Virus record (IMG/VR): IMGVR_UViG_3300022744_000022
Location: 144,487 to 208,486 of that record
Reading direction: 5' to 3' (one strand)
Length of the DNA stretch: 64,000 bases
Position 1 is the stretch's first letter; every line of letters starts with the position of its first letter. Below, piece by piece: positions 5,859 to 55,384 of this stretch. The translations under genes and the position numbers were made by a program. The notes beneath the pieces were generated by a model. That model made no database searches and had not been told where the DNA came from. It worked only from the letters and a program-made list of their open reading frames with translations.

Positions 5859-7043
5859 TTACGCTTTGCCTCCGAACCGTGCTTTGGCTTGTTCTTCAAC
5901 TTGCGACTCCAACTCACGGGGATTCAGGGCTAACTCAGGGTTTTGCAGAAGCAGCGACCGGGCCATGGGTACAAGCGCTCCGCGATCTTGCCCCTTAAGC
6001 TGATACACCTCAAACAGACGCACCTGATCGATCTCCGGCTTCTTTAGCATCTCAAGAAAACGCTTCTCGAAGGCGGGATCATCTGCGTGGGACAACAGAA
6101 CTTCCCTGAGTCGCGCAAGCCCGTCCTGCGACAAGAATGACACAGGCGTGCGAACGGTCCACCCCAGATCCAGCAGGTCCAGTAGTAGGTGGATTTCTTG
6201 TTCGGGCAGCCCACGGCTGAGCGCTGTGGCGAACCCGGGTTCTTCCGCGAGCATTTCCTTGAGCACTTCTCCGAGCCCCAAGTCATGTAGCAGCTCTACT
6301 GAGCGGCGAGGCTGTGGCGACTCCAAGATGTCCTCGACAAGGATTTTGCGAACCGCATCCCAAGGCATCTGTTTAAGCTTGTGCGCGTTCTGCTGAATGC
6401 TCGTCCGCACATCGGGCGAGATTTTGAACCCGTACTTCGCCACGAACTTGACAGCACGAAGCATCCGGGTCGGGTCATCCGAGAACGTCTTGTCGGGGTC
6501 CACCGGCGTGGTGAGCAGGCGATCCTCAAGGTGCTGTCGGCCGTTGCCGAGAAGGTCCAGCACTTCGGCACGATCAGGTCCGTGCTCCAGGTCTAGAAGC
6601 CGCCAGAGTAGCGTGTTGAACGTGAACTCGCGACGCTGCAAGTCTTCTTGGATGGTCGCAGGTTCGACCATGTGCGGCTTGTAACCTTTGCCCGAGGGAT
6701 CGCCGTAGCTCTCTTTGCGAGCGTTGGCGATCTCCAGGACTTCACCCTTGAGATCATGCCCGTCAAGGACCCACGAGTCCGCGACGGTGAGGATCGCCAC
6801 CCCATATTGGTTAGTCGTCAAATTCGTGCGGGTCGGAATGATCCGTTGGAGCTGCTCCGCGAACCACGCAGAGTCCTTCCTACCCCCGAGAGCTACGGAA
6901 TCGACCACTACGTCCACGTCTTTAGGCGCAAGGCCCATCAAGTGGTTTCGTACTGCGCCACCGACGATGTAGACGTGTTCTCCAACGCCAAGGCGCTTGG
7001 TGGCCAAGGACAAGAAACGTAGGAGTGCCGTTATTTTTGTCAT
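5859..7043 (-). CDS. cca: Class II tRNA nucleotidyltransferase (CCA-adding/poly(A) polymerase family)
   Basis: YIVGGAVR..KDVDVV, EDLQRREFTFN, DDPTRMLRAVKF; no PAP-specific (L/I)VGRRF signature seen. Confidence 0.8.
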   Translation of the reverse strand: MTKITALLRFLSLATKRLGVGEHVYIVGGAVRNHLMGLAPKDVDVVVDSVALGGRKDSAWFAEQLQRIIPTRTNLTTNQYGVAILTVADSWVLDGHDLKGEVLEIANARKESYGDPSGKGYKPHMVEPATIQEDLQRREFTFNTLLWRLLDLEHGPDRAEVLDLLGNGRQHLEDRLLTTPVDPDKTFSDDPTRMLRAVKFVAKYGFKISPDVRTSIQQNAHKLKQMPWDAVRKILVEDILESPQPRRSVELLHDLGLGEVLKEMLAEEPGFATALSRGLPEQEIHLLLDLLDLGWTVRTPVSFLSQDGLARLREVLLSHADDPAFEKRFLEMLKKPEIDQVRLFEVYQLKGQDRGALVPMARSLLLQNPELALNPRELESQVEEQAKARFGGKA

Positions 7044-37145: not shown

Positions 37146-37922
37146 ATGACTTTGACTCGCCACGACTGGGACATGCTCTTGATTGCTCAAGATGCCGACG
37201 TGCGTCTTGAGGCGATTCAGCAAGAGGGCCTTCTCCAGGCCACATTCCCGGCATTACAGACTCTTGTGGGCTTTGGGGGCCAGGATTCCGGGCATAAAGA
37301 CCTCTGGGCACACACCAAGCAAGTGGTGATCCAAACGGTCCCTCAGGTGTTGTGTCGGTGGGCAGCCCTGTTTCACGATGTAGGGAAGCCACAGTCGTTC
37401 ACTCGCGTGGACGGTAAGATCGCCTTCCACCATCACGAGGAAACGTCGGCTCGCATTTTCAAGCGGGTTGCACGTGAAACCGCGCTATTTCAGCCCGGAG
37501 AGCTTGACGAGATCACGTTCGTGATCCGGCATTTGGGGCATGTAGAGGCCTACGAGTCTGATTGGACCGATTCGGCGATCCGGCGGCTCACCCGCGAACT
37601 CGGTACCCACCTTGATTCTGTGTTTGCGGTGGCAAGGGCGGACTGCACAACTGCCCGACCTGAGAAGCGGCAACGGCAGCTCAAGCGAGTTCACGAGCTT
37701 CGGACGCGCATCGACACTCTTGCGGCCTTGGACGCAGTGCCACCGGCGCTCCCCACGGGGCTTGGGGACGTGCTGATGCAGCGGTTGGGCATGCAGCCCG
37801 GCCCCGAGTTTGGAGCCGTCATGCGGGGGCTCAAGGCCCGTGTCGAGGCTGGGGAACTGCCCCGCAACGCGGACTTTGAAGTTTACCTCGCGACCTTGGA
37901 CAAGCAACGTGGCGGACTCTAG
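37146..37922 (+). CDS. HD-domain protein resembling the C-terminal half of multifunctional CCA-adding enzymes
   Basis: FPAL..L.G..Q...HKDLWAHT, WAALFHDVGKP, FHHHE..SA, ADCT, TG..LM..LG..PGP.FG. Confidence 0.8.
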   Translation: MTLTRHDWDMLLIAQDADVRLEAIQQEGLLQATFPALQTLVGFGGQDSGHKDLWAHTKQVVIQTVPQVLCRWAALFHDVGKPQSFTRVDGKIAFHHHEETSARIFKRVARETALFQPGELDEITFVIRHLGHVEAYESDWTDSAIRRLTRELGTHLDSVFAVARADCTTARPEKRQRQLKRVHELRTRIDTLAALDAVPPALPTGLGDVLMQRLGMQPGPEFGAVMRGLKARVEAGELPRNADFEVYLATLDKQRGGL

Positions 37923-38432: not shown

Positions 38433-39036
38433 GCTCTTGCGCTACACCATCGGCCATGGCCTGCGCTTGGAAGAAAGCCCGCTTCTTAGCACAAGAGGTG
38501 CCTTCCAAGGGACATGTAGGTCCCGTTCGCTTAGCCCAATTACAATTTGCGCACAAAGTCTGAAAGCCTGGGGGAAATTTCTGCGCCACCAACCAAGAAA
38601 AAATCTGCGTGACTTTCTTACGGTGCTCTCTACCCCCACCGGCTACATGATCAATTTGCAGTAACCTCTCTTCTGGCTCTCCACAACAAGCACAAGCCTT
38701 CCCGTAATGTGCAAAGCATGCTAAACGGTCACGTTCGTAACGAGCTGTGGCCCAACGTCGAGCAGCAAATCGGTGATCCGCGTAATACCTGTTGTTGTAG
38801 TCAAAACACCTAGGGCATTTCCGATACCCCTCTTTGACTGGACGCCCGCACTCGCAAATCCCGCGATCCCGTAGTTTCTTCTTGCGGTTAGCCCGGTATT
38901 CATTCTGGACCAGATTACAAGGGTCACAATGATTCTTGGATACGCCCGGCTGAAATGGCTGGCGGCACTTCATACAGAGCCCCGCCTCTTTGAAGCGTTT
39001 TCTACGTGCCTTCTCTGCTTCAGATGCGGCTGACAT
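38395..39036 (-). CDS. Cys-rich HNH-like endonuclease
   Basis: CxxC repeats, [27 protein letters not shown]; visibly more AT-rich. Confidence 0.7.
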
Positions 39037-39577
39037 TCTCCTGAAGCATCTTTATAAATAGTTCCCCCTGTTCCTGTGCATCGGACAGGGCGACATGGGT
39101 ATGGGGGTTCTTGGAAAACCAACGCTTGGGCATGTTCCGCTTAGTAGCCTTTCGGAAGTCGCTCTTGAGCATGCACATGGCGAACGTCTTGATGTCTAGG
39201 CCGGAGAACGAGAAGGGGCTCTCGCCCGCGAACCTGATCAAGTACCAGTACACGAACATGAAGTCGTACGTGGCGGGGTACCCGACGAACACAGGCTTGC
39301 CAGGAAGGCCCTTGAGCCACTCTAGGTAGCCCTTCATGGCATCCACGGGGGTCACAAGGCCTTGACGGCACGCTGCCCAAGCCTCGGGCTGCCCCGCCCA
39401 CCATTCGGCGGTTTTGGGGTCTGCGGAGGCCCCTGGTAGCGTTTCTAGATTCCGCGTGAAGGTGTCGAGCAACGTGCCCTCTGACGAGAAGGCAGCGGAT
39501 CCGAAGCTCAGCATCGAGTTGGGGCCGGGGATTGGGCCGTCGGATTTAATGTCTGTGGAGACGTAGATTTCTTGCAT
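39020..39577 (-). CDS. DEDDh 3'-5' exonuclease (RNase AS-like); ExoI Glu reads Lys
   Basis: [33 protein letters not shown]. Confidence 0.8.
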
Positions 39578-40058: not shown

Positions 40059-40439
40059 ATGCCAGATATCAATCCAGGGATCCGCCTTACCGTCGGGATG
40101 TTGAACGCAGCCGGACACAAAACCACTGACTCGGGGGATGGCGAAACCCGCGACTTCACGTGCGATCGTGAAAAACCCTACGTGGTCGTGGTTTCGACCC
40201 CCGAGCGCCTCGTTCAAGAAGCTCAAGAGATCGTCCAACTCTTGAAGGCCAACGGGATCTTGGTTTCGCCCATCGGGGACGACGAAGCCGGTGGCGTACA
40301 AATCCAAGCTACCTACGACCCCAGCATGGGGCAGGAACACGGCGCAGCACTGATCGATCTTTCCGGGATTCACGACCGGATGCTGCCGCCGGTCATCATT
40401 TTCATGGGGCCCTGCGTGCCCTTTTGCACAGGCAGTTGA
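40059..40439 (+). CDS. Hypothetical protein
   Basis: GGTGTA 9 nt before ATG; INPGIR..V..LN..G..T.DSGDG. Confidence 0.65.
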   Translation: MPDINPGIRLTVGMLNAAGHKTTDSGDGETRDFTCDREKPYVVVVSTPERLVQEAQEIVQLLKANGILVSPIGDDEAGGVQIQATYDPSMGQEHGAALIDLSGIHDRMLPPVIIFMGPCVPFCTGS

Positions 40440-40537
40440 AAACAAGCCTTGCGCCCTTCTCGGTCGGTGTAGTAGAACCGGGTGTCCTTGAATCGGTGTA
40501 GTAAGGGGACCCGGACTACCCGGCGAGAAAGAGTCGA

Positions 40538-41221
40538 ATGACGAACGCATTCTGGAAGGGTCTGGCCAAGGTCGGACTTGTTGAGATCAACGAAGACGCC
40601 CCCGCCGCCTCTCAAGGCGAGACGGCTGCACAGCATACGGCGGTCACGGCTCGCCCTGCGGCCACACCGGCGGCACCTCCTGTCGGCGACCCTGGGCTCG
40701 TGGCAACCCTAGACGAGTCATCCAGGGCACAGCTCGTGGCTTCGATGGAGGCATCGGGGGCACAGCTCGTAGAAGACCTGATGGACATGCTCGGGACGCT
40801 CCGGGAGAACATCACCGATGAAGCGGCGCTCTACAAGGCGGCGCTCAAGATCCTGATCAAGCAGGGCAACACAGTCCTGGCGATTCGTCAGGACTTCGAC
40901 AAGTGCATCGGGGCCCTCGAAACCACAAACCGCGAGTTTGCGGCTCAACTCAAGAGCCAACTTGACAAGCGGGTGGGTGGTAAGCTCAAGACCGCTCAAG
41001 ACTGCAAGGCTCAGATAGCTGCCAAGCAGCAACAGATCGAAGCACTTCAGAACGAAGTGGCCAACCTTGCGGCCCAAGCTCACGAAGCTGAGGGCAGTGT
41101 GGCCGATGAACAGGCCAAGCTCGATCTCGCTCAACAGCGGTTCACACACAACTACACAGCGATTCGCGGAGAAATTGAAGCCAACTGCGCGAAGGTCGCC
41201 CAGTACGGGGAGAAGCTATGA
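40538..41221 (+). CDS. Coiled-coil protein (operon gene 1)
   Basis: Long heptad-like C-terminal half; coupled to next gene. Confidence 0.75.
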   Translation: MTNAFWKGLAKVGLVEINEDAPAASQGETAAQHTAVTARPAATPAAPPVGDPGLVATLDESSRAQLVASMEASGAQLVEDLMDMLGTLRENITDEAALYKAALKILIKQGNTVLAIRQDFDKCIGALETTNREFAAQLKSQLDKRVGGKLKTAQDCKAQIAAKQQQIEALQNEVANLAAQAHEAEGSVADEQAKLDLAQQRFTHNYTAIRGEIEANCAKVAQYGEKL

Positions 41222-42282
41222 ACGAGATCACGACCAGTCAGCCAAAGAAGTGGTACGAGAAGCCGGAGAACGTCCTGGTCTACGGCGTGCTTGGGGGCGT
41301 GGCTGTCTACAGCATCAAGCACATCGAGTCGATCGTTGCCTCGATCGTCCACATCATCGAGATGGGGGTCTGGGGGCTCGCGTTGCTGCTGGTGGGTTCC
41401 GTGCTGGGCTTCATGCTCGTCAACGGCGACTTCCACCGTGCCGCATGGCTGCTGTACGAAAACGCCATGCGTAAGGTTACGGGCCTGATCGTTGAGCTGG
41501 ACCCTATTGGGTCCATGAAGTCCTTCCTCAAGAGCTTAGGCAAGTACCAACAACAGCTCAAGACGAGTTTGCAAGCCATGCGTGGGCAGGCTGAGAAGCT
41601 CACGGACAAGCTCTCTCGTTCGGATCAGGCACAAGAGCACAGCCTCAAGCTGATGTCGCAGGCTCAGTCCCGTTCAACCGAAAAGGGCATGGCCCTTGAG
41701 ATGCGCAAGCAAGGTCGGAAAGCCTCTCGCGCCGAAGATCTCTCGATCACGTACCAAGGCCTACTCAACAAGGTCCGCATGATGATCGCGGTCATGGAGA
41801 AGGTCGAGGAAGCCACGGACTTCATGGTCGTGGACATCGCGGAAACCATCGAGACGGAATCCGAAAAGCGGGAGACCATCAACGAAGCTTGGAAGGCTAT
41901 GAACGCCGCCAAGCGTATCCTTGCCAAGAACAAGCAGCGTGAGATCTACGACATGGCGTTGGAAGCGACGCAGCGTGACTACGCCTTCAAGGTCGGCGAG
42001 ATCAAACAGTTCATGCGGGACACCGAGAGCTTCATCAACACGATGGATCTCGAAAACGGTGTGGCAGACGCCGATGCCCTCAAGATGCTTGAGCGTTGGG
42101 AGCAACGTTCCCTTGCTCTGCTCGAAGGCGGCTCGGGTAAGACCAAGTACCGTGTGGCCCCCGTCACAGCGGGCAGCTCACGCATGCTCGTGTCCAGCAC
42201 CGGCGCTCAAGTGATCGATGCCGAGATAGTTGAAGGCGACCGGCCTTCGTTCGCCACTCTCTTCGACAAGCTCGACAAGTAG
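41218..42282 (+). CDS. Membrane-anchored PspA/IM30-like coiled-coil protein
   Basis: Two N-terminal hydrophobic helices, then ELDPIGSMK.. and a long coiled coil. Confidence 0.6.
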   Translation: MNEITTSQPKKWYEKPENVLVYGVLGGVAVYSIKHIESIVASIVHIIEMGVWGLALLLVGSVLGFMLVNGDFHRAAWLLYENAMRKVTGLIVELDPIGSMKSFLKSLGKYQQQLKTSLQAMRGQAEKLTDKLSRSDQAQEHSLKLMSQAQSRSTEKGMALEMRKQGRKASRAEDLSITYQGLLNKVRMMIAVMEKVEEATDFMVVDIAETIETESEKRETINEAWKAMNAAKRILAKNKQREIYDMALEATQRDYAFKVGEIKQFMRDTESFINTMDLENGVADADALKMLERWEQRSLALLEGGSGKTKYRVAPVTAGSSRMLVSSTGAQVIDAEIVEGDRPSFATLFDKLDK

Positions 42283-42306
42283 ACCTCAGGAAAGAAGGCT
42301 ATTGTT

Positions 42307-44142
42307 ATGAAAGACGTTACGTTCAAGAAAGGCCCACTTTTTACCCTACTCGGTATCCTGGGGGCAGGTTTCGGGCTCTACTACGCCTACAACCACGGCT
42401 ACCTCGGGCCCTCCAGTGCTGGTCCCGCTTCGATCCCTCAGGTGGCGGCCCTTCCGGATGCCCCCGAAGCGGTGATCCCGCAGGTGGCGGTCCCGATTGC
42501 TCCACTACCGTCGGCCACCCCGGCGGCCGTTCCTGGACCTAGCGTCCGGTTCCTCGGGATGGCGTGGAACTCGCAGATGGGTCTGGCGTTCGCCAATGGC
42601 GGCCCCAAGACCACCGTGGGCAGTCTCATGGAGCAGCACAAGGTCAACCTGACCTTCACCCGTGAGGATGACTGCGGCAAGATGCAGACGCAGCTCATTG
42701 CGTTCGCCAAGTCCCTCAAGGACGGGGATCCCAACCCTACGGACGGCGCTCACTTCGTCGCTGTGATGGGCGATGGTTCCGCAGCCTTCATTGCAGGCAT
42801 GTGGGACGAGTTGAAGAAGCTCGGTCCCGAGTACCTGCCCGAAGTGATCGGCTCCGCTGGTTACTCGCGTGGCGAAGACAAGCTCATGGGGCCCGCCGCA
42901 TGGAAGCAAACCCCCAAGCTCATGCGGGGCAGCCTGATCGCTGGCTACCTGCGGGATGGTGACTGGAACATCGCCCTCAAGTTCGGTGCGGACAACGGGG
43001 TCAAGAACAACCCGGATGAACGGACCTGGGACCCGGATGCCATGAACTGGTACTCCACCAGCGACTTTATCGCGGCGGGTGACGCCTACATCAACGGCGT
43101 TTGCGAAGATCGTCCTGTAGTCCGTGACGGCAAGCGTACGGGCGAGACCAAGCACATTTGCGTCAACGGTGTCGTGACGTGGACCCCGGGTGACGTGAAC
43201 ATCGCGACTCAAAAGGGTGGCCTCGTCTCGATCGTCTCGACGGCTGACGGTCGTTTTGGCCCAGGGTCAATCGGTTACCGTTCGCAGATGCCCAACACCA
43301 TCATCGGTATCAAGAAGTGGAACCAGGCCAATCGTAAGACGGTCGAGAACTTCCTGGCCGCCATGTACGAAGGCGGAGATCAGGTGAAGGCCAGCCCGGC
43401 GGCTTTGACCCGGGGTGCTCAGGCCTCAGCGGTCATCTACCACGACAAGGATGCAGCGTACTGGGAGAAGTATTTCAAGGGCGTCGTGGAGAACGACAAG
43501 ACGGGTGTGCCGGTCGAGCTTGGCGGTTCCTCTGTCAACAACCTGCAAGACGCGGGCCGCCTCTACGGTCTTACCCAAGGTGCTCCGAATCTCTTTGCCG
43601 CCACCTACACGGTGTTCGGTGACCTCGTGAAGCAACAGTACCCGAAGCTTGTCCCGAGCTACCCGCCGGTCCAGGACGTGCTCAACGCGAGCTACACCCA
43701 AAACCTACTGCAAGCGCAACAGGCGTCGGGCGTGGCCGTGGTAGCAGCGGACAAGCCGGTGTTCGAGGCCAAGACCGAAGTCACGCAAGTCGTCTCAAAG
43801 CGTGAGTGGCCCATCAACTTCGAGACGGGCAAGGCCACCTTTACCCCTGAGACACTGACGCAACTAAACGAGCTGTACAACGGCCTCTTGGTTGCGGAGG
43901 AATTGGGGATCGTGATTGAGGGCCACACGGACTCCACGGGTGACCCCATCAAGAACCAGACCCTCAGTCAGATGCGTGCCGATGCGGTTCGTGACTGGCT
44001 CATGCAGCAAGGTGCATCGAGCTTCCCTCGTGACCGCTTCATCAAGGTCAAGGGGCTCGGGGACACCAAGCCGGTGGCCACCAACGATACCGACACAGGG
44101 CGGGCCAAGAACCGTCGTGTGGTCGTCATCTTGGGCACCTGA
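42307..44142 (+). CDS. Periplasmic substrate-binding (SsuA/NMT1-like) domain fused to OmpA-like peptidoglycan-binding domain
   Basis: N-terminal TM; SAGYSRGED; C-terminal INFETGKA, IEGHTDSTG, N.TLS..RA.AV, G.G..KP, GRAKNRRV. Confidence 0.85.
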   Translation: MKDVTFKKGPLFTLLGILGAGFGLYYAYNHGYLGPSSAGPASIPQVAALPDAPEAVIPQVAVPIAPLPSATPAAVPGPSVRFLGMAWNSQMGLAFANGGPKTTVGSLMEQHKVNLTFTREDDCGKMQTQLIAFAKSLKDGDPNPTDGAHFVAVMGDGSAAFIAGMWDELKKLGPEYLPEVIGSAGYSRGEDKLMGPAAWKQTPKLMRGSLIAGYLRDGDWNIALKFGADNGVKNNPDERTWDPDAMNWYSTSDFIAAGDAYINGVCEDRPVVRDGKRTGETKHICVNGVVTWTPGDVNIATQKGGLVSIVSTADGRFGPGSIGYRSQMPNTIIGIKKWNQANRKTVENFLAAMYEGGDQVKASPAALTRGAQASAVIYHDKDAAYWEKYFKGVVENDKTGVPVELGGSSVNNLQDAGRLYGLTQGAPNLFAATYTVFGDLVKQQYPKLVPSYPPVQDVLNASYTQNLLQAQQASGVAVVAADKPVFEAKTEVTQVVSKREWPINFETGKATFTPETLTQLNELYNGLLVAEELGIVIEGHTDSTGDPIKNQTLSQMRADAVRDWLMQQGASSFPRDRFIKVKGLGDTKPVATNDTDTGRAKNRRVVVILGT

Positions 44143-44151
44143 AATAGCCCC

Positions 44152-44931
44152 ATGACCAACGCCTTTCGACCCAACCGAAGCCTCACCGGACAAGCCTGGA
44201 CCATCCTCTTGGGTGTGGAGGCCGCTGCGTTCCTGCTTATCTGGACCTTCGGGGACGCCTACTCGATCCCGGGGCCCTACGAGGTGCTGCAAGCTCTCGG
44301 AAGGGCTATCCGGGACGACGGGCTGCTCTACGAGCTAGGGGTCAGCTTCCGGATCAACGTGGAGGCCTTGGCGATCTCCACGTTGATCTCGGTAGGGCTC
44401 GCATGGCTCTCTGTCCTGGCTGCCGTACGCCCCATCGTGGCCGTGCTGTCTAGGGCCAGGTTTCTCAGTCTCGCGGGATTCGTGACCGTGTTCACGTTTG
44501 CCTTTGGGGGCGGCCATGCCCTCAAGGTGTCGCTCCTGACCTTCGGTATCTCGGTCTTCTTTCTCACGTCGATGGCCTCGGTGATCGCTTCGATCCCCCG
44601 AGCCGACTGGGATCAGGCCCGGTCCCTGAGAATGTCGGACTGGCGGAGTGTCTGGGAGATCGCTGTGCTCGGGAAGGCCGACGAAACGTTCGAGATGTTC
44701 CGCCAGAACGCTGCGATCGGCTGGGTGATGCTCACCATGGTCGAGGGTTTGGTCCGCTCTGAGGGCGGCGTGGGTGGCATCCTGCTCAACTCCACCCGCT
44801 ACCGAAACTTCGCCGCCGTGTTCGCAGTGCAAATTGCCGTGGCTCTCTTGGGTGCCGGACAAGACCGCCTGATCGCGTACCTCAAGCACAAGGTGTGCCC
44901 TTACAGTGCCCTCACGTTGGAGCGTAACTAA
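44152..44931 (+). CDS. ABC transporter permease (SsuC/TauC-like)
   Basis: About 6 TM segments; IP....DQARSL.MS.W, E......GGVG. Confidence 0.85.
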   Translation: MTNAFRPNRSLTGQAWTILLGVEAAAFLLIWTFGDAYSIPGPYEVLQALGRAIRDDGLLYELGVSFRINVEALAISTLISVGLAWLSVLAAVRPIVAVLSRARFLSLAGFVTVFTFAFGGGHALKVSLLTFGISVFFLTSMASVIASIPRADWDQARSLRMSDWRSVWEIAVLGKADETFEMFRQNAAIGWVMLTMVEGLVRSEGGVGGILLNSTRYRNFAAVFAVQIAVALLGAGQDRLIAYLKHKVCPYSALTLERN

Positions 44932-44933
44932 TC

Positions 44934-45878
44934 ATGGGTTTCAACGATCTTGCCAACCAAGCTCTAGAGGGCGCTTCCGTACGAGCCCCCGAGACCCGGC
45001 ACTCTAAAGTGGGGCAATACTCTCTCGGGGAAGTGCTGGTACGAGTCACGGACGTGACGCTCAGCTTCCAGAACAAAGACAACCCGGATGAGCCTCCGAA
45101 AGTTGTGCTCAAGCCTACGAGCATCGAGGTTCGGAACATCAGCCGTCCGAGTCTTGAGCAGGGACAGGTTGTGGGGCTGCTCGGGCCCTCGGGCATCGGC
45201 AAGTCGCAATTCAGCCGCATCCTCGCGGGGCTCCAGAAGCCTACGAGTGGCCAAGTGCTGGTCAGTGACTTCGAGGCGGACAAGACAGGGGCTCAGCTTC
45301 GCCCTGTCGAAGCCGGGCACGTCGGGATGGTCGCTCAGGACTACCCGTTGTTTCGGTGGCGTACTGTGCTCGGGAACCTGATCGTCGCGTTGGAGCACAC
45401 CACGCTGTCCAAGAAGGACAAGATCGAGAGGGCTCAAGAGTACCTCAGGCTGTTTGACGTTCAAGAGCTGGCCCCCAAGTACCCGGCTCAGCTCTCGGGT
45501 GGGCAACGTCAACGGATCGCGATCATCCGGCAACTCTTGTGTGCCGAGCACTTCATCGTGATGGACGAGCCCTTCACGGGTCTAGACCCGATCTCGAAGG
45601 ACATCGTGTGCGAAGTGATCAACAAGGTCGCGACACTGCACGAGCACAACACCATCTTCGTGGTGGCTCACGACATCACCGCGTTGTGCCAAATTTCCGA
45701 TCAGCTCTGGCTCTTTGGCCGGGACCGTGACGAAGAAGGCAAGGTGATCCCCGGTGCTACGGTCAAGACCAAGTTCGACCTCATCGAGCGAGGGCTAGCG
45801 TGGCAGCCCGGCATCTACGAGACGCAGCCTTTCACGGATTTCGTGCGTGAGGTTCGTTCGGAATTCAGGCACCTCTAG
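44934..45878 (+). CDS. ABC transporter ATP-binding protein (SsuB/TauB-like)
   Basis: GPSGIGKS, Q-loop, LSGGQRQR, IVMDEPF, AHD. Confidence 0.95.
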   Translation: MGFNDLANQALEGASVRAPETRHSKVGQYSLGEVLVRVTDVTLSFQNKDNPDEPPKVVLKPTSIEVRNISRPSLEQGQVVGLLGPSGIGKSQFSRILAGLQKPTSGQVLVSDFEADKTGAQLRPVEAGHVGMVAQDYPLFRWRTVLGNLIVALEHTTLSKKDKIERAQEYLRLFDVQELAPKYPAQLSGGQRQRIAIIRQLLCAEHFIVMDEPFTGLDPISKDIVCEVINKVATLHEHNTIFVVAHDITALCQISDQLWLFGRDRDEEGKVIPGATVKTKFDLIERGLAWQPGIYETQPFTDFVREVRSEFRHL

Positions 45879-45887
45879 GAGTAAATT

Positions 45888-46898
45888 ATGCACACCTTCA
45901 CCGTTGGCACCGAGAAGATGGCCGAGTGGTTCCTTCAGTCGCTCACGGAGGGGCACCGCTACGGTCCTCAACCCTTCGTTAAAGCGCTGGAGGGGTCGAG
46001 TATCTTGAGTGAGCCGACGGGACCGCTCTTGGGCACGACGGCTCGCAATGCCTTCTACTGGGGGCTGACGACGGCGTTCAGCCAACACGTGCCGCTTCGG
46101 ATCTCTCCCGACGCGGTGTGGCTGACGATCTTGAACGGGCTTACGCAGCACATCGACGAGAACCCCGAGGGGCTCCGGCACCACTTCGTGGAGCATGCGG
46201 GTAAGGAAACCTTGCAGGTTTCGGTCGAAGGCTCGCGGTGGGCCGAGCAAGGCGTGCAGCTCATGTCGGCGGCGTTGAAAGAGCGCCTTGGCAAGCGTCA
46301 CGACCTGATCGTGTCGTCGTTTTCGACAACGGCGGACGTGGATCGTGTTGCCTCGGAGATCATGCTCATGGGGGCGATGAAGCACTACTTCGAGTATCGT
46401 ATGATGCTCTGCTGCGGCTTGACCAACGTGACGATCTTGGGCGAGCCCGCCGACTGGGAGAACATCAAAGTTCGGCTCGGGGCAATGAGCGAGTTCGATC
46501 TCAAGTGGTGGACCGATCACTTGATCCCGATCGTGGACCAATTCAAGTCCGCCTGTGAGGGCAACCCAGACGTGGACTTTTGGAAGCGTCTGTACGTTCG
46601 CGAAGGCTACGGCTCGGGCGGCCAGCATGGTTTCACGGGGTGGCTGACGGCGTTCTACCCGTACTTGCAGGCTGCTCGCGGGGCCCGCGAGCGCAACCCG
46701 AAGGTCAACTGGGCTGCGGCTGGCCGTGTGGATGCGGACGACCTTCCTTCAGGGCTGGCGTTTGCTCCAGTGACCGTCGTATACCCAGACGGCTCGGAGC
46801 ACCCTCACAAGTTCTACGGGGGCGTCGTGGGCTGTACGTTCGAGGAAGGGGCCATTCGGCCGATCTCAGGCTGGTCAGCGCAAGAGCAACCAGCGTAG
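45888..46898 (+). CDS. DUF4419-like protein
   Basis: AFSQHVPLRISPDAVWLTI, FSTT, LMGAMKHYFEY....CG...VT..G...DW. Confidence 0.8.
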   Translation: MHTFTVGTEKMAEWFLQSLTEGHRYGPQPFVKALEGSSILSEPTGPLLGTTARNAFYWGLTTAFSQHVPLRISPDAVWLTILNGLTQHIDENPEGLRHHFVEHAGKETLQVSVEGSRWAEQGVQLMSAALKERLGKRHDLIVSSFSTTADVDRVASEIMLMGAMKHYFEYRMMLCCGLTNVTILGEPADWENIKVRLGAMSEFDLKWWTDHLIPIVDQFKSACEGNPDVDFWKRLYVREGYGSGGQHGFTGWLTAFYPYLQAARGARERNPKVNWAAAGRVDADDLPSGLAFAPVTVVYPDGSEHPHKFYGGVVGCTFEEGAIRPISGWSAQEQPA

Positions 46899-46899
46899 A

Positions 46900-47199
46900 T
46901 CACCCCAGGATCTCTTTCACTCGCTCGTCCAGGGTCTCTTTACCGTGGACGATTTCGATGATGTGCAGCGAGCCCCGCCAACGATTCAGGCCGTCGTCCT
47001 TCGGATCCTTGACGCCCAGGCCCGTCAGATCGTCGTCAAGCCCGCGTTGGACCTTGGCTTCGGCTTCAACGCGCCCCATCTCGTCACGGCAGACTTCGAG
47101 CGCTTCCTCTTCGGTCATCCCGTAGTGCGTGAAATCGTCCACGACGGTGGAGAATCTGGCCAACAGACCGTTGGGTTGTTTCACGATCCGGGATGGCAT
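46900..47199 (-). CDS. Hypothetical protein
   Basis: KQPNGL.ARFSTVVD.FTHY.MTEEE. Confidence 0.65.
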   Translation of the reverse strand: MPSRIVKQPNGLLARFSTVVDDFTHYGMTEEEALEVCRDEMGRVEAEAKVQRGLDDDLTGLGVKDPKDDGLNRWRGSLHIIEIVHGKETLDERVKEILG

Positions 47200-51628: not shown

Positions 51629-54600
51629 ATGGCAACCAGATACACCCAAGTTGGACCCACCCCCTCTCCGGCGGCAGGCGGTGCCTCAGAGCTGGCGACC
51701 ACCACGAACCCGGTCGTAATCTCAGGTGCCTCTGCCCCCTCGGTGGGGCAAGTGCTCACTGCCACGAGCGCTACGGCGGCTAACTGGCAGAGCCCTGGGG
51801 GTGGAAGCCTGACGGGTCAGACCCAAGGGGCCACGCAGTACAACGTTGCGCTGGGTGTCGCGGCCCTCACGGCGTTGACATCCGGCAACTTCAACACCGC
51901 GATCGGCAGCAGTGCGCTCGATGTCCTCACCTCAGGGTCGGACAACGTGGCGGTGGGTTACAACGCTCTTGGGGCTAACGTTACGGGTGGCGAGAACGTT
52001 GCGATCGGTAACTCGGCGCTATTGGGTTTCAACCAAACGCCCGGAGTCGGACAGAACGTAGCGGTGGGGCATCAGGCGCTCTCCGCTAGCATGAGTGGCT
52101 CTAGCAACACGGCGATCGGTTACCGGGCTCTCCAAGTCAGCACTGCGTCTAACTTGACCGCCGTAGGTGCTGGTGCTCTCGACGCCAATACTTCGGGCAC
52201 TGGAAACACTGCTGTTGGATCCGACGCCCTTGGTGCCAACTCCACAACGAGCAGGAATACTGCGGTCGGAGCGAGTGCCCTCGCAGCCACCAACGGCGAC
52301 GACAATACCGCAGTTGGGTACAACGCGCTCACTGCGAACAACTCAGGTTCCAACAAGAACACAGCAGTGGGCTCTACCGCCCTCGATGCCAACACCTCAG
52401 GGACGAATAACACTGCTGTTGGATACAACGCGCTAGGGGCCAACACCTCAAACGGAAATAATACCGCCGTCGGTTCTGACGCTCTCGCAGTGTCTGGGGG
52501 TACGGCAAACACCGCGATCGGTAGACAGGCACTCCTGTCCCTCACGATCGGTGGCCACAATACAGCTCTAGGCGCAGGAGCCGGTGCTGGGCTTACGACG
52601 ACCGACCACAACGTGGCAATTGGTTCCAACACCAGCAACGCGGTTGGAGGCGGAGATACCGTAGCGGTCGGTTATCAAGCGTTGATTTTGAATACAGCTT
52701 CAGGAAGCGTAGCCATTGGCTCACAAGCCCTCGACGCTAACACCTCAGGACTTCGTAATACTGCGGTCGGCACCGAAGCCCTCGGTGCCAACACCACTTC
52801 CGCAAACAGTACAGCGGTCGGCTACAACGCTCTCCTGCTCAGCACGGGGAGTCAGAACACTGCTGTCGGCTCTCAAGCTTTAGATGCTAACACTTCGGGA
52901 CTCAGTAATACCGCCGTAGGTTTTGACGCTCTAGGACTCAACTCGTCAGGCGGTGCCAACACCGCCGTCGGGAACGAAGCCCTACGATCGGTCACCACTG
53001 CAAATGATGGGACAGCGGTTGGTTGGCGGGCTCTTTACCTAACTACAGGCTCAGACAATACAGCCGTAGGATACAACGCCGGATCTCAACTCTCTACGGG
53101 CACCAACAACACGGCGCTAGGGTCCGGTACTTTTGCTACCTCCGTAGCCAGCTCGGGATCGTTCAATACGGCGATTGGTTCGTTAGCGATGGCGGCCCAC
53201 ACCACGGGTAGCAGCAACACGAGCGTTGGTGTTCAGGCCCTCAATACCACAACCGGATCCCAAAACGTAGCCGTCGGGCGTTCCGCTTTGGCCGTACCTC
53301 TTACGGCTAACGATAACGTGGCGGTGGGCTACCAGGCTCTCACTGTCAATACTGCCGCAGGTAGCGTAGCTGTGGGTGCTCGCGCTCTCGATGCCAACAC
53401 CACAGGTACAGGGAACACCGCCGTTGGAACCGATGCTCTTGGAGCAAACACAACGGCTGCGGATTCCACGGCGGTTGGTTACAACGCTCTCTTGGTCAGC
53501 ACGGGGGCAGGTAATACTGCGGTCGGTTCCGCTGCCCTCGATGCCAACACCACCGGCACAGACAACGTAGCGCTGGGCCGCAATGCAGGCGGAGCAGTCA
53601 CCACAGGTGCCAACAACACGCTCATCGGCACGGGCACGGGTAGCACCCTCACCACAGGCTCCGACAACCTCGTTATCGGTCGTAACCAAGACGTTCCGAC
53701 CGCCGGGACCTCGAACTACCTCAACATCGGTGGAGCCATCACCGGCGAGACTTCAACCGGCAATGGTCAGATCCAGTTCCGCCTCACCACCACCGCTGGA
53801 ATCACCGCCTCGACCACGCAGACACAAGGCAACGGGGCGCTCACTTCTAGAGTGAACCAAGTCTCAGTGGTCGCCAACGCTAATGACGTGGTGACCCTCC
53901 CGGCTGCGGCTGCGGGCCTAGAAGTGTTGGTCACGAACAATGGAGCGAATACGCTTCAAGTGTTCCCGGCTTCTGGCGATAACCTTGGAGCAGGCGTCAA
54001 CACTTCAACTACGCTTGCGGCTGGCGATACAGTTCGTTTTACAGCGTACGACGCTACCACCTGGACCCCTCAGACTGAGGGTGGTGGGGGTAACTTTGTA
54101 CCTACTGACACAGGCAGCGCAGGTACCGCAGGTGAGAATGCGGCCCAGCTCGCTTGGACAAGCCAAGATGGTGGAAGTAACACCGGGGGTGCAGCGGGCA
54201 ATGGCGGTACTCTACTCCGTCAAGGGGGCAACGGCGGCCTTGGTGATACGGGCGGTGGTGCTGGTGGTGACGCGGTTACCTATGGCGGCAATGGTGGCAA
54301 TTCCAGCACGTCAGGTAACGGTGGTAACGGCGGCGATGCAGACCTCATTGCAGGTACAGGTGGTGTTGCCCTAGGTGGCGCTGGTAATGGCGGTGACGGT
54401 GGTCGCGCGTACATCAGCCCTGGTAATGGTGGTAACAGCACATCGGGTAATGGCGGCAACGGTGGCTTCACCCAAATCTACTCCGGTAGTGGCGGTTCCG
54501 GACCTACCGGGGACGGTGACGCGGGCTACATCCAGATCATCGGTGGCAACGGTGGCACCTACCAAGGTGGCGGTGGTGGCGGTGCTCGCATCTCCATCAA

Positions 54601-55384
54601 GGCAGGTGACAACTCCGACCCTGCACTCAACCCTTTCGCCAATCAACTCACCTCGGGCAACCTGTTCCTGATCTCAGGTAACGGTGCCCCCAATGCCGCA
54701 GGCGCTGGCGGTGCTGCGGGTTTCTACGCCGTACAGGGCGGCACTGGCGGTAACGGAACCTCCGGCAACAACGGTGGCGCTGGCGGCCTGGGCATCGTGG
54801 GCGGAGGCCAAGGCGGCACCTCGGACTCTGCCACTGGAGGCGCTGGCGGCATGTCAGCAATCAGTGGCGGTCTTGGTGGAACCAGTGGAGGCACCGGAGG
54901 TACGGGCGGCGATGTTGCCTTGGAAGGCGGCAATGGTGGATCTGGTGCAAACGCTGGTCGCGTCCTCATCGGCACCAACCAACCTCTCCTTGCTGCGTTC
55001 GGTTCTAGAACGCGAACCATCGAGATGGGCAACACGACGCACTACCCGCCGATCACACAGGTGGGCTCTGTGCGTCAGCCCAAGGCAACCTTAACGCCTG
55101 GCGCAAACATCGACGTAAATCTCGCGCAAGTTACCAACGCAGAAGTTACGCTCGATCAAAACAGCACGCTCGACTTCAGCAATCTGGCAAACGGCGTTCG
55201 CGGGTCCATCGTCGTGAAGCAAGACGGCACGGGTGGCTGGACCCTCTCGAATGGCACAAACATGAAGACGCCAGGCGGGACCGCTCCAGCGATCAGCACG
55301 GCTGCTAGTAGTGTCAGTGTGCTCGACTACTACTGCGATGGCACAGACGTGTTCGTGACGCTTCGTGGGGCAAACTTCTCGTAG
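51629..55384 (+). CDS. Tail fibre / adhesin-like protein with YadA-head-like ~14-aa repeats and Gly-rich region
   Basis: GQVLTAT....WQ; dozens of NTAVG.xAL..NT.G repeats; GGxGGxGG stretches. Confidence 0.75.
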   Translation: MATRYTQVGPTPSPAAGGASELATTTNPVVISGASAPSVGQVLTATSATAANWQSPGGGSLTGQTQGATQYNVALGVAALTALTSGNFNTAIGSSALDVLTSGSDNVAVGYNALGANVTGGENVAIGNSALLGFNQTPGVGQNVAVGHQALSASMSGSSNTAIGYRALQVSTASNLTAVGAGALDANTSGTGNTAVGSDALGANSTTSRNTAVGASALAATNGDDNTAVGYNALTANNSGSNKNTAVGSTALDANTSGTNNTAVGYNALGANTSNGNNTAVGSDALAVSGGTANTAIGRQALLSLTIGGHNTALGAGAGAGLTTTDHNVAIGSNTSNAVGGGDTVAVGYQALILNTASGSVAIGSQALDANTSGLRNTAVGTEALGANTTSANSTAVGYNALLLSTGSQNTAVGSQALDANTSGLSNTAVGFDALGLNSSGGANTAVGNEALRSVTTANDGTAVGWRALYLTTGSDNTAVGYNAGSQLSTGTNNTALGSGTFATSVASSGSFNTAIGSLAMAAHTTGSSNTSVGVQALNTTTGSQNVAVGRSALAVPLTANDNVAVGYQALTVNTAAGSVAVGARALDANTTGTGNTAVGTDALGANTTAADSTAVGYNALLVSTGAGNTAVGSAALDANTTGTDNVALGRNAGGAVTTGANNTLIGTGTGSTLTTGSDNLVIGRNQDVPTAGTSNYLNIGGAITGETSTGNGQIQFRLTTTAGITASTTQTQGNGALTSRVNQVSVVANANDVVTLPAAAAGLEVLVTNNGANTLQVFPASGDNLGAGVNTSTTLAAGDTVRFTAYDATTWTPQTEGGGGNFVPTDTGSAGTAGENAAQLAWTSQDGGSNTGGAAGNGGTLLRQGGNGGLGDTGGGAGGDAVTYGGNGGNSSTSGNGGNGGDADLIAGTGGVALGGAGNGGDGGRAYISPGNGGNSTSGNGGNGGFTQIYSGSGGSGPTGDGDAGYIQIIGGNGGTYQGGGGGGARISIKAGDNSDPALNPFANQLTSGNLFLISGNGAPNAAGAGGAAGFYAVQGGTGGNGTSGNNGGAGGLGIVGGGQGGTSDSATGGAGGMSAISGGLGGTSGGTGGTGGDVALEGGNGGSGANAGRVLIGTNQPLLAAFGSRTRTIEMGNTTHYPPITQVGSVRQPKATLTPGANIDVNLAQVTNAEVTLDQNSTLDFSNLANGVRGSIVVKQDGTGGWTLSNGTNMKTPGGTAPAISTAASSVSVLDYYCDGTDVFVTLRGANFS

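What the first reader, a model, noticed from the sequence alone, without database searches (positions are those of the whole stretch)
40466..45878. Five-gene envelope module: coiled coil + TM-PspA-like + SBP-OmpA fusion + ABC permease + ABC ATPase
Seen: a tightly spaced operon behind two GGTGTA boxes (40466, 40495). The binding protein is membrane-anchored and fused to an OmpA-like peptidoglycan-binding domain, which ordinary SsuABC/TauABC importers lack. It sits with two long coiled-coil proteins, one with a PspA-like 'DP' start and TM anchors. Established: PspA/Vipp1 are ESCRT-III-like membrane remodellers. Inference: not a simple nutrient importer but a wall-tethered, ATP-driven membrane sensing, repair or exclusion machine carried by a phage. 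The PspA-like protein also ends in the LFDKL tag.
Basis: partly seen in the sequence, partly recalled or inferred. Interest (0 to 1): 0.75.

Follow-up and report, generated by a model that had tools for sequence, protein, structure and literature searches.

The report
Phage PspA-like protein with wall-tethered ABC importer
A huge phage carries a five-gene envelope cassette: a helical partner protein, a membrane-anchored relative of the membrane-repair protein PspA, and an ABC importer whose binding protein is tied to the cell wall. The bacterial version of this cassette was already noted in the literature, so this is a new phage variant of a known but untested system.

Summary
Five tightly spaced + strand genes (40538-45878) lie behind two GGTGTA boxes in a 208 kb IMG/VR phage fragment.

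- **g3** is a signal-anchored NrtA/TauA/SsuA-type binding protein fused to an OmpA-like peptidoglycan-binding domain.
- **g4 and g5** are its permease and an ATPase with intact catalytic motifs.
- **g2** has no Pfam hit, but it is a membrane-anchored, divergent PspA/IM30. A profile of 41 phage copies aligns to genuine PF04012 proteins (hhalign 94.7%, E 6e-8). Those proteins occupy the same operon slot in Acidobacteriota.
- **g1** is a conserved helical partner with no known family.

The order g1-g2-g3-g4-g5 recurs in 39 of 44 related phage loci with enough upstream sequence; g2 itself is present in 42 of them.

Bacteria (Acidobacteriota, Armatimonadota, Myxococcota) carry g3-g4-g5 with the g1 relative, soluble PspA, a further membrane protein (gX) and a double AAA+ ATPase in various combinations. 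Ravi et al. 2024 already listed that operon. A 2026 preprint noted ABC transporters next to pspA in huge phages.

This is therefore a new phage variant of a known, uncharacterised kind. A role in membrane maintenance coupled to transport is inferred, not shown. The ligand is unknown.

The parts
40464..40503 (+). Two direct copies of TCGGTGTAGTA (GGTGTA boxes at 40466 and 40495) in the gap upstream of g1. Candidate phage promoter or initiation signal.
   Evidence: Sequence read. The hexamer is enriched, 49 copies against 17 expected. In 21 of the 49 sites the motif ends 3-14 nt (19 of them 8-10 nt) before the first start codon of an ORF; random positions give a mean of 2.5. Here the two copies lie 66 and 37 nt from the ATG.
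40538..41221 (+). g1: a 227-aa cytoplasmic helical protein. It has a short conserved N-terminal peptide, a Pro/Ala-rich linker and a helical domain of about 150 aa. It is the conserved partner gene of the cassette and has no known family.
   Evidence: Pfam, NCBIfam and PHROGs give only coiled-coil noise. Iterated search finds homologues directly upstream of g2 or PspA in phage and Acidobacteriota loci, and downstream of gX in Armatimonadota. Its stop codon overlaps the g2 start by 4 nt. hhalign against PspA gives 2.6%.
41218..42282 (+). g2: a 354-aa membrane-anchored, divergent PspA/IM30-like (ESCRT-III superfamily) protein.
   Evidence: No Pfam hit. A broad g2 HMM hits bacterial 243-aa proteins in the same operon slot (E 3e-6 to 5e-3), and those are PF04012 (62-69 bits against a cut-off of 33.9). 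hhalign gives 94.7%, E 6e-8, over 214 columns starting at PspA residue 1. The best PDB hits of the g2 profile are Vipp1, in register. The AF2 helix pattern fits. The top Foldseek hit is Vipp1 7o3w at E 1.4e-3. The family has 1719 clusters at E<=1e-3.
41272..41421 (+). g2 residues 19-68: hydrophobic hairpin, probably two transmembrane helices, with positive charges on both flanks. This would place the PspA-like domain in the cytoplasm (inferred).
   Evidence: Hydropathy scan. AF2 models a helix at 18-68. The bacterial PspA counterparts lack this segment and align from HMM position 75.
41425..42123 (+). g2 residues 70-302: the PspA-like helical domain. It has an alpha0-like helix at 70-94, the LDP motif at 94-96, then helices 96-151, 158-232, 240-275 and 282-302.
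42244..42279 (+). g2 C-terminal short motif (...SFATLFDKLDK) after a disordered linker. The pattern [FY]x[DNE][LM][FL]xK is conserved across phage g2 proteins and absent from the bacterial PspA and gX.
   Evidence: (pLDDT below 50 for 320-337, short helix at 345-348). It is unique in the 208 kb record.
42307..44142 (+). g3: a 611-aa protein made of a signal anchor, a type II periplasmic binding domain and an OmpA-like peptidoglycan-binding domain.
   Evidence: AF2 pLDDT 86.4, pTM 0.84. Foldseek and Pfam results. More than 500 bacterial species genomes and 48 IMG/VR loci hold full-length relatives.
42328..42393 (+). g3 residues 8-29: N-terminal transmembrane helix (signal anchor). No lipobox cysteine.
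   Evidence: AF2 helix at 8-29. Sequence printed.
42541..43731 (+). g3 residues 79-475: binding domain of the NMT1/NrtA/CmpA/TauA/SsuA class, with invariant acidic and aromatic motifs (SRGEDK, RDGDWN, MGDG, W87, W220, W292, Y434, Y445).
   Evidence: Foldseek: NrtA 2g29 E 2e-9, CmpA 2i49, TauA 6ssy (TM 0.71 by target), SsuA 3ksj and 3e4r. Atlas feature neighbours are NMT1/NMT1_2 proteins. A homologue carries a precomputed PF09084 NMT1 hit. No sequence-level PDB or Pfam hit.
43789..44136 (+). g3 residues 495-610: OmpA-like peptidoglycan-binding domain. The TD...N..LS..RA...NRRV motif residues are invariant (D542, R557, N602-R604).
   Evidence: PF00691 at 68.4 bits. PDB hits TagL, OmpA C-terminal domain and YfiB at E 1e-19 to 1e-12. 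Foldseek rmsd about 2 A. Invariant columns.
44152..44931 (+). g4: a 259-aa ABC importer permease, a divergent member of the binding-protein-dependent type (NitT/TauT-like).
   Evidence: BPD_transp_1 E 5e-4, below cut-off. SaoP E 5e-7 and NtrB E 3e-4. PHROG 6743 E 2e-8. NrtB 8w9m at E 0.52 only. Syntenic with g3 and g5 in 72 of 81 bacterial and 47 of 49 viral loci.
44934..45878 (+). g5: a 314-aa ABC ATPase with all catalytic motifs and a family-specific conserved C-terminal extension of about 55 aa.
   Evidence: PF00005 at 94.9 bits. Walker A (G84-K90), Q135, the signature (S188-Q191), D211-E212 and H246 are invariant in 24 homologues, and the tail consensus is conserved.
45888..46898 (+). DUF4419 gene, 9 nt downstream of g5. 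It is adjacent and possibly co-transcribed, but it is not part of the conserved cassette.
   Evidence: PF14388 E 1e-72. No homologue in any of the 48 related viral loci or 80 bacterial loci.

Best explanation
The five genes are a phage-borne, trimmed version of a bacterial envelope system. That system couples ESCRT-III-superfamily membrane proteins (PspA type) to a type I ABC importer whose binding protein is fixed both to the inner membrane and to peptidoglycan.

**Shown**
- g3 is a signal-anchored NrtA/TauA-class binding domain fused to an OmpA-like wall-binding domain.
- g4 and g5 are its permease and an ATPase with intact catalytic motifs.
- g2 is a divergent PspA/IM30 homologue with an N-terminal hydrophobic hairpin.
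- g1 is a conserved helical partner whose stop codon overlaps the g2 start.
- The five genes travel together in huge phages. Their homologues are linked in Acidobacteriota, Armatimonadota and Myxococcota.

**Inferred**
- g2 sits in the inner membrane with its PspA-like domain in the cytoplasm. There it polymerises on, and stabilises, the membrane during the long infection cycle of a huge phage, preserving the proton motive force.
- g1 regulates or adapts g2.
- The wall-tethered importer takes up a small solute of unknown identity at the same sites. This would link solute or turgor balance to membrane maintenance.
- The phage version has the anchor fused to PspA. It lacks the bacterial TM protein gX and the double AAA+ ATPase next to the cassette.
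- The conserved C-terminal motif of g2 may recruit a host or phage remodelling factor instead.
For: **Phage origin**
- The window is the last 64 kb of a 208 kb IMG/VR record, estimated 44% complete.
- It holds RtcB, a CCA-adding enzyme and virion structural proteins.

**Parts**
- Domain hits. g3 model and fold matches. Homologue with a precomputed NMT1 hit.
- ATPase motifs are invariant.

**g2 as PspA**
- HMMER links it to PF04012 proteins in the syntenic slot.
- hhalign gives 94.7%, E 6e-8, over 214 columns. Controls score 2.6% and 0.7%.
- Vipp1 is the top PDB hit by profile (E 0.005, in register) and by Foldseek.
- The helix pattern of the model fits.

**Linkage**
- Phage loci show g1>g2>g3>g4>g5. 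g2 is present in 42 of the 44 loci that have upstream sequence.
- Bryobacterales: g1>PspA>g3>g4>g5>gX>AAA+.
- Thermoanaerobaculia: AAA+<PspA<g1<|g4>g5>gX>g3.
- Armatimonadota: g3>g4>g5>gX>g1.
- Linkage that survives rearrangement argues for a functional unit.

**Stability in phages**
- The g3 tree shows several deep viral clades and one bacterial clade with coherent phyla, so the cassette is long-standing in these phages.
- The g2 family is large, with 901 clusters at E<=1e-30.

**Literature**
- The same bacterial operon is listed, with a proposed link between membrane remodelling and solute transport (PMC11237479).
- Huge-phage pspA genes lie next to ABC transporters, and some phage pspA genes are expressed (10.64898/2026.10.24.761521).
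Against: - g2 does not reach any Pfam PspA score.
- The narrow-alignment hhalign comparison was weak.
- No physical contact between g1, g2 and g5 could be predicted (no answer).
- No RNA data were listed.
- The ligand is unknown, and the binding domain belongs to an ordinary nutrient-uptake class.
- 51 of the 80 bacterial loci show no PspA within the fetched flanks, among them all the Armatimonadota loci. The transporter can therefore stand without an adjacent PspA.
- I could not confirm the published Snf7 assignment of gX.
- Topology, polymerisation, timing of expression and any benefit to the phage are all inferred.
Confidence: 0.6

Rival explanations
1. It is an ordinary auxiliary metabolic gene set: a nutrient importer (nitrate, bicarbonate, taurine, sulfonate or thiamine precursor) that the phage uses to feed the infected cell. 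g1 and g2 are merely neighbouring genes with a separate job.
For: The binding domain matches NrtA, CmpA, TauA, SsuA and a thiamine-binding protein. The ATPase falls in PHROG 293, annotated as ABC transporter under 'moron, auxiliary metabolic gene and host takeover'. Some bacterial loci show g3-g4-g5 without a detectable PspA nearby.
Against: g2 is present in 42 of 44 phage loci and g1 in most of them. PspA, g1, gX and AAA+ stay linked to the transporter in bacteria through three different gene orders. The OmpA fusion is present in every full-length member examined (the 28 aligned; the 120 listed all carry PF00691). g1 and g2 overlap by 4 nt, and g3 follows after 24 nt.
Confidence: 0.15
2. It is a membrane-remodelling device for the phage's own purposes, such as building or maintaining an intracellular compartment, controlling the timing of lysis, or resealing the entry lesion, rather than general stress protection. 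The transporter would serve as a positional anchor to the wall.
For: PspA, Vipp1 and ESCRT-III proteins remodel membranes (established; PMC8281802, listed). g2 is permanently membrane-anchored, unlike the bacterial PspA. The cassette is restricted to very large phages in the sample; 14 of the 48 IMG/VR contigs exceed 200 kb.
Against: The same system is chromosomal in bacteria, and its g3 clades follow bacterial phyla. This argues for a cellular housekeeping or stress role. No lysis or compartment genes are linked to it.
Confidence: 0.1
3. It is a superinfection-exclusion or anti-phage defence module acting at the envelope.
For: It is phage-borne and located in the envelope. The OmpA domain gives domain-level hits to ZorB models, and the ATPase to several defence ATPases, in PADLOC.
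Against: The PADLOC hits cover only generic OmpA and ABC domains. The bacterial homologues sit beside housekeeping genes such as catalase, a methyltransferase and a phosphate-type binding protein, not in defence islands. The g3 clades follow bacterial phyla.
Confidence: 0.05
4. It is not a phage feature at all: bacterial DNA joined to a viral contig, or host DNA flanking a prophage.
For: g3, g4 and g5 are 45-60% identical to bacterial chromosomal genes. One IMG/VR contig (L085) has the bacterial gene order and sits in the Armatimonadota clade of the g3 tree.
Against: The cassette lies 18 kb from the end of a 208 kb viral record, with phage genes on both sides, and G+C is even across the window. 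The g2-type cassette recurs in 42 viral loci, many on contigs of 300-530 kb. The viral g3 sequences form their own deep clades.
Confidence: 0.03

Closest known systems
Bacterial PspA / PBPB+OmpA / ABC / TM-Snf7 / double-AAA+ operon listed by Ravi et al. 2024 (mSystems, PMC11237479; example OGG56892.1, Candidatus Handelsmanbacteria)
   Same: [quoted passage not shown] I found this layout in Bryobacterales loci, with proteins homologous to g1, g3, g4 and g5, and with PF04012 PspA in the g2 slot. The proposed logic is also the same: OmpA binds the wall, the binding domain binds the transported solute, and PspA acts on the membrane.
   Different: The phage version has a transmembrane hairpin fused to a much more divergent PspA that no Pfam model recognises. 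It carries a conserved C-terminal motif. It lacks the TM protein gX (called TM+Snf7 by those authors) and the adjacent double AAA+ ATPase. The published note is a genomic-context observation only, with no experiment.
pspA next to complete ABC transporters in huge phages (Yuan and Chen, bioRxiv 10.64898/2026.10.24.761521)
   Same: The preprint reports huge-phage pspA embedded in membrane-associated modules, including 15 cases beside a complete ABC transporter. It proposes membrane maintenance during infection.
   Different: The preprint mentions neither the OmpA fusion, nor g1, nor a TM-fused PspA. Its IMG/VR screen required proteins of 200-300 aa with a PF04012 hit, which g2 (354 aa, no Pfam hit) would fail. 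I could not check whether their 15 cases belong to this family.
LiaI-LiaH of Bacillus and PspB/PspC-PspA of E. coli (membrane anchors for a PspA-type effector; from general knowledge)
   Same: A PspA-family protein is held at the cytoplasmic face of the membrane by a small transmembrane partner. In g2 the anchor and the effector are one polypeptide.
   Different: I saw no sequence relation to LiaI or PspB/C. No PspF-type regulator is present. The linkage to a transporter is not part of those systems. I did not test this here beyond the absence of Pfam hits.
NrtABCD / CmpABCD, TauABC and SsuABC importers (NitT/TauT family)
   Same: The fold of the binding domain matches. The permease is weakly related to NrtB, NtrB and SaoP. 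It is a three-component type I importer.
   Different: The binding domain is about 100 residues longer, with no detectable sequence similarity to solved members. It is signal-anchored rather than free or lipidated, and always fused to an OmpA-like domain. The conserved pocket candidates are acidic and aromatic rather than anion-binding in character (inference).
OmpA-like wall anchors (Pal, YiaD, YfiB, MotB, TssL/TagL)
   Same: The C-terminal domain matches at E 1e-19 to 1e-12, with the peptidoglycan-binding motif residues conserved.
   Different: Here the domain is attached to a transporter's binding protein. None of the named relatives listed has that arrangement.

Membership tests
PspA/IM30 (PF04012; ESCRT-III superfamily), for g2 | Match to the Pfam PF04012 model at or above its gathering score | tested here: not met
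   No PF04012 hit even at E 0.1. The bacterial proteins in the same operon slot score 62-69 bits against a cut-off of 33.9.
PspA/IM30 (PF04012; ESCRT-III superfamily), for g2 | Profile-level homology to genuine PspA over the whole domain, starting at helix alpha0 | tested here: met
   hhalign of 41 phage g2 sequences against 13 bacterial PF04012 proteins gives 94.7%, E 6e-8, over 214 columns from PspA residue 1. HMMER gives E 3e-6. Coiled-coil controls score 2.6% and 0.7%. The g2 profile's best PDB hits are Vipp1 at E 0.005, in register.
PspA/IM30 (PF04012; ESCRT-III superfamily), for g2 | ESCRT-III-type fold: alpha1-alpha2/3 hairpin followed by alpha4 and alpha5 | tested here: inconclusive
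PspA/IM30 (PF04012; ESCRT-III superfamily), for g2 | Soluble, peripheral membrane protein without a transmembrane segment | tested here: not met
   g2 has a hydrophobic hairpin at residues 19-68 that the bacterial counterparts lack.
PspA/IM30 (PF04012; ESCRT-III superfamily), for g2 | Assembly into rings or rods, with membrane binding and remodelling | not testable with these tools
   Needs purified protein, electron microscopy and liposome assays.
Type I ABC importer, NitT/TauT-like, for g3-g5 | ATPase with Walker A, Q-loop, LSGGQ signature, Walker B plus catalytic Glu, and H-loop | tested here: met
   PF00005 at 94.9 bits. All motif residues are invariant in 24 homologues.
Type I ABC importer, NitT/TauT-like, for g3-g5 | Permease of the binding-protein-dependent (BPD_transp_1) type | tested here: inconclusive
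   PF00528 E 5e-4, at 20.2 bits against a cut-off of 26.4. SaoP E 5e-7 and NtrB E 3e-4, both far below their cut-offs. NrtB at E 0.52 in the PDB.
Type I ABC importer, NitT/TauT-like, for g3-g5 | Binding protein with the type II periplasmic binding fold of the NMT1/NrtA/TauA class | tested here: met
   The model has pLDDT 86. Foldseek gives NrtA E 2e-9, CmpA, TauA (TM 0.71) and SsuA. A homologue carries PF09084. No sequence-level hit for the window protein itself.
Type I ABC importer, NitT/TauT-like, for g3-g5 | Known ligand and direction of transport | not testable with these tools
   Needs binding and uptake assays.
OmpA-like peptidoglycan-binding domain (PF00691), for the g3 C-terminus | Pfam match above cut-off, with conserved wall-binding motif residues | tested here: met
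   68.4 bits against a cut-off of 27.2. D542, R557 and N602-R604 are invariant in 28 homologues. Structural matches have rmsd about 2 A.
PspA, PBPB+OmpA, ABC, TM-Snf7, AAA+ operon (Ravi et al. 2024) | PspA-type gene and an uncharacterised helical gene directly upstream of the PBPB+OmpA gene, followed by permease and ABC ATPase | tested here: met
   Window gene order, compared with the Bryobacterales loci and the published example.
PspA, PBPB+OmpA, ABC, TM-Snf7, AAA+ operon (Ravi et al. 2024) | Membrane-anchored divergent Snf7 gene (gX) after the ABC ATPase | tested here: not met
   gX is present in 59 ORFs, all in bacterial loci except one. It is absent from every phage locus except L085, and from the 208 kb record. 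DUF4419 occupies that position in the window.
PspA, PBPB+OmpA, ABC, TM-Snf7, AAA+ operon (Ravi et al. 2024) | Adjacent double AAA+ ATPase (inactive plus active domain) | tested here: not met
   It is adjacent in about 24 bacterial loci but in only one viral locus. The record has one AAA+ ORF 107 kb away, 29% identical over the AAA domain only.

The most novel reading that the evidence does not exclude
The phage cassette is a self-contained envelope-spanning machine. The wall- and membrane-tethered binding protein reports the state of the periplasm or the wall-to-membrane spacing. The ABC ATPase, through its family-specific C-terminal extension, uses ATP to drive assembly or turnover of the anchored PspA-like polymer. 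It would thus replace the bacterial AAA+ ATPase. The conserved C-terminal motif of g2 and g1 would be the coupling elements. On this reading the transporter fold has been turned into a mechanotransducer for an ESCRT-III-type repair system. That would be a phage-encoded way of keeping a dying cell energised.
Probability: 0.12. Interest if true: 0.8.

Novelty: new variant of a known kind. Interest (0 to 1): 0.45.

Why it matters
PspA, Vipp1 and ESCRT-III proteins are the universal membrane-repair and remodelling family. How the bacterial members are positioned, energised and regulated outside the E. coli Psp system is largely unknown.

This cassette ties such a protein genetically to a wall-tethered ABC transporter. 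The tie holds in three bacterial phyla and in a large group of huge phages, and the phages carry a minimal five-gene form. That makes it a compact system for testing whether membrane maintenance is mechanistically coupled to solute transport.

For phage biology, it would show that very large phages bring their own equipment to keep the host inner membrane working through a long infection.

It also shows that Pfam-based screens for phage pspA miss a large family. The g2 family has at least 900 clusters at 50% identity.

Tried and rejected
- **Nucleotide search of 40400-46900 against 50,697 phage records:** no match. Only one protein-level full-length hit, in LR756500.1.
- **Direct family scans of g1 and g2** (Pfam, NCBIfam, PHROGs, PADLOC): only coiled-coil noise.
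- **Pairwise BLASTP of g1 and g2 against their positional counterparts in LR756500.1:** nothing convincing. Homology appeared only with profiles.
- **Narrow-alignment hhalign of g2 against PspA:** weak. The broad alignment was needed.
- **Structure-based discrimination of PspA from BAR:** not possible.
- **Complex prediction for g1+g5+g2:** no answer, score 0.00, and not usable either way.
- **Sequencing runs:** only the source DNA run (freshwater metagenome) was listed and no RNA run. I therefore did not lay reads.
- **Sigma-70 promoter and terminator scans:** nothing above background.
- **DUF4419 as a sixth member:** rejected, because it is absent from all related loci.
- **The LFDKL tail as a tag shared within the genome:** rejected.
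- **An Hsp70 link suggested by one contig with grpE-dnaK-dnaJ beside the cassette:** not general.
- **gX as the true counterpart of g2:** rejected. hhalign gives only a 34-column match in the transmembrane region at 43%, or 3.5% with another alignment.
- **The published Snf7 assignment of gX:** I could not reproduce it by PDB profile search.
- **Word-indexed profile search with g2:** added little. The exhaustive search gave the family size.

Full report
**Setting**

The window is the last 64 kb of a 208,486-base IMG/VR virus record that CheckV puts at 44% complete. That implies a huge phage of roughly 450-500 kb. The source DNA run is a freshwater metagenome.

G+C is even at 0.57-0.62 across the window. 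Recognisable genes around the finding are typical of large phages:
- RtcB at 30170-31588.
- A CCA-adding enzyme at 5859-7043.
- A kinase at 984-2219.
- A 1251-aa virion structural or tail-spike-like protein at 51629-55384.

**The observation**

Two copies of TCGGTGTAGTA, containing the GGTGTA boxes at 40466 and 40495, lie in the 98-nt gap before g1. GGTGTA occurs 49 times in the window against 17 expected. In 21 of the 49 cases it ends 3-14 nt, mostly 9-10 nt, before the first start codon of an ORF. Random positions give a mean of 2.5. It is therefore a real initiation signal of this phage.

Upstream of g1 the boxes lie 66 and 37 nt from the ATG. A promoter role with a short leader is plausible. 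A DUF4419 gene follows g5 by 9 nt, but no related locus has it.

**The transporter**

- g5 is an ABC ATPase (PF00005, 95 bits). Every catalytic motif is invariant among 24 homologues, and it has a conserved C-terminal extension of about 55 residues.
- g4 is a divergent binding-protein-dependent permease, nearest to SaoP, NtrB and NrtB, and scores below the curated cut-offs.
- g3 has an OmpA domain (68 bits) with the wall-binding motif residues invariant.
- The 400-residue middle part of g3 has no sequence-level family. The AlphaFold model is confident (pLDDT 86, pTM 0.84). It matches NrtA (E 2e-9), CmpA, TauA, SsuA and a thiamine-binding protein.
- The language-model neighbours of that middle part are NMT1-type proteins. 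A homologue on another contig carries a precomputed NMT1 hit plus OmpA.
- Helix 8-29, preceded by basic residues, is a signal anchor.

**g2**

No library recognises g2. It has about 40 close homologues, all on contigs that also carry g3.

A profile of 41 phage copies found g2 directly upstream of g3 in 42 viral loci. At E 3e-6 to 5e-3 it also found 243-aa proteins directly upstream of g3 in Bryobacterales and other Acidobacteriota. Those proteins align from their first residue to position 75 of the g2 profile. They are genuine PspA/IM30 (PF04012, 62-69 bits against a cut-off of 33.9). Their profile hits solved Vipp1 and PspA structures at E 5e-13 to 5e-7.

Profile-profile comparison of g2 with them gives 94.7% probability, E 6e-8, over 214 columns. 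The other helical proteins of the cassette score 2.6% and 0.7% against PspA. The match is therefore not coiled-coil noise. The broad g2 profile's best PDB hits are Vipp1, in register, at E 0.005.

The AlphaFold model (pLDDT 75) shows these elements:
- A hydrophobic hairpin at 18-68.
- An alpha0-like helix at 70-94.
- The LDP motif at 94-96.
- Helices 96-151, 158-232, 240-275 and 282-302.
- A disordered linker and a short terminal helix.

I conclude that g2 is a divergent, membrane-anchored PspA homologue. This rests on sequence profiles and synteny. The fold is consistent but not decisive. The family is large, with 1719 clusters at E<=1e-3 and 901 at E<=1e-30.

**g1 and the wider system**

g1 has a short conserved N-terminal peptide, a proline-rich linker and a helical domain of about 150 residues. 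Iterated searches find it next to g2 or PspA in nearly every locus.

A survey of 130 loci gives these layouts:

| Group | Gene order |
|---|---|
| Phage loci | g1>g2>g3>g4>g5 (g2 present in 42 of 44 loci with upstream sequence) |
| Bryobacterales | g1>PspA>g3>g4>g5>gX>AAA+ |
| Thermoanaerobaculia | AAA+<PspA<g1< then g4>g5>gX>g3 |
| Armatimonadota | g3>g4>g5>gX>g1 |

- gX is a 300-350-aa protein with a transmembrane segment and a helical region. It has no Pfam family. It gave 59 ORF hits, all in bacterial loci except one.
- The AAA+ protein has about 570 residues, with the AAA domain in its second half. It lies next to the module in about 24 bacterial loci.
- Phage loci lack both gX and the AAA+ protein, with one exception each. 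The 208 kb record has no gX.
- The record has a single AAA+ ORF 107 kb away. It is related only through the AAA domain.

**Evolution**

More than 500 bacterial species genomes hold full-length g3 relatives, some on contigs of megabase size.

In a FastTree of 118 g3 proteins, the bacterial sequences form one supported clade with largely coherent phyla. The viral sequences form several deep clades. The root is not known. Only the 80 best bacterial loci were sampled, so I claim no direction of transfer.

Three contigs are worth noting:
- Two short contigs binned with Methylobacter and Chitinimonas MAGs carry the g2-type cassette and fall among the viral sequences. They are probably phage contigs.
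- One IMG/VR contig (L085) has the bacterial order and an Armatimonadota-like g3.

**What is already known**

- Ravi et al. [quoted passage not shown] They suggest that membrane remodelling is linked to solute transport, with OmpA binding the wall.
- Yuan and Chen (bioRxiv 2026) report pspA in 184 huge phages. Fifteen of those genes lie beside complete ABC transporters. They propose membrane maintenance during infection.
- Neither paper describes the TM-fused PspA, g1, the loss of gX and AAA+ in phages, or the tail motif.

**Mechanism**

Shown: the identities of the parts and their linkage.

Inferred:
- g2 is inserted with both ends in the cytoplasm, because positive charges flank the hairpin.
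- Its PspA-like domain coats and stabilises the inner membrane.
- g1, probably translationally coupled to g2 (their coding regions overlap by 4 nt), is its regulator or adaptor.
- The importer, pinned between membrane and wall, takes up a solute.

The invariant acidic and aromatic residues of the binding domain would suit a cationic or quaternary-amine ligand better than an anion. I could not map them onto the cleft, so this remains a guess.

The conserved C-terminal motif of phage g2 ([FY]x[DNE][LM][FL]xK) resembles the short docking tails of other ESCRT-III-family proteins. It could recruit a remodelling ATPase or a chaperone. Nothing here tests that.

Complex prediction gave no answer, and no RNA data were listed.

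**Verdict**

The functional claim is plausible but untested. The system is a phage variant of a bacterial operon already noted in print. Interest is moderate.

Noticed in passing
whole window; examples at 40044, 51003, 57789, 58378: GGTGTA (extended form cGGTGTAg) is enriched about threefold. In 21 of 49 copies it ends 3-14 nt, mostly 9-10 nt, before the first start codon of an ORF. The near-fixed spacing suggests a phage-specific promoter for leaderless or short-leader mRNAs, or an unusual ribosome-binding signal.
   Followed up: partly
45888-46898: A DUF4419 gene (PF14388, E 1e-72) follows g5 by 9 nt, in the position that gX holds in bacterial operons. None of the 128 related loci has it.
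   Followed up: partly
G000:C1:77416-78987 (outside the window): The phage record encodes a 523-aa AAA+ protein with the AAA domain in its second half, like the bacterial module's AAA+. It is only 29% identical, over that domain alone. Whether it serves the cassette is open.
   Followed up: partly
L132:1367-8617: On one JGI metagenome contig, grpE, dnaK and dnaJ lie about 1-2 kb upstream of g1-g2-g3. This was not seen in any other locus. It is of interest because the Vipp1 tail is reported to bind Hsp70 (PMC12798727, title and abstract).
   Followed up: partly
L003, L055 (MAG contigs) and L085 (IMG/VR contig): Two short contigs binned with Methylobacter and Chitinimonas MAGs carry the phage-type cassette and group with the viral g3 sequences. 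They are probably phage DNA in MAG bins, or weak host hints. A 478 kb IMG/VR contig has the bacterial gene order and an Armatimonadota-type g3.
   Followed up: partly
bacterial loci, e.g. L077:9255-10229, L008:9217-10116, L005:4604-5668: gX is a 300-350-aa protein with a transmembrane segment and a helical region, and no Pfam family. It is linked to the transporter in 59 bacterial ORF hits. Ravi et al. call it a membrane-anchored divergent Snf7. I could not confirm that by PDB profile search or hhalign.
   Followed up: partly
30170-31588, 5859-7043, 39020-39577, 37146-37922: RNA-repair and processing genes: RtcB ligase, a CCA-adding tRNA nucleotidyltransferase, an Rv2179c-like 3'-5' exoribonuclease (E 2.6e-5, just below the Pfam cut-off) and an HD-domain protein.
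   Followed up: no
51629-55384: A 1251-aa protein with repeated matches to virion structural and tail-spike PHROGs, 5-7 stretches each.
   Followed up: no
L001 (LR756500.1, 372086-385762): An unannotated 462 kb uncultured phage record holds the same five-gene layout at 28-38% identity for g3-g5. Its g1 and g2 are detectable only by profiles.
   Followed up: yes
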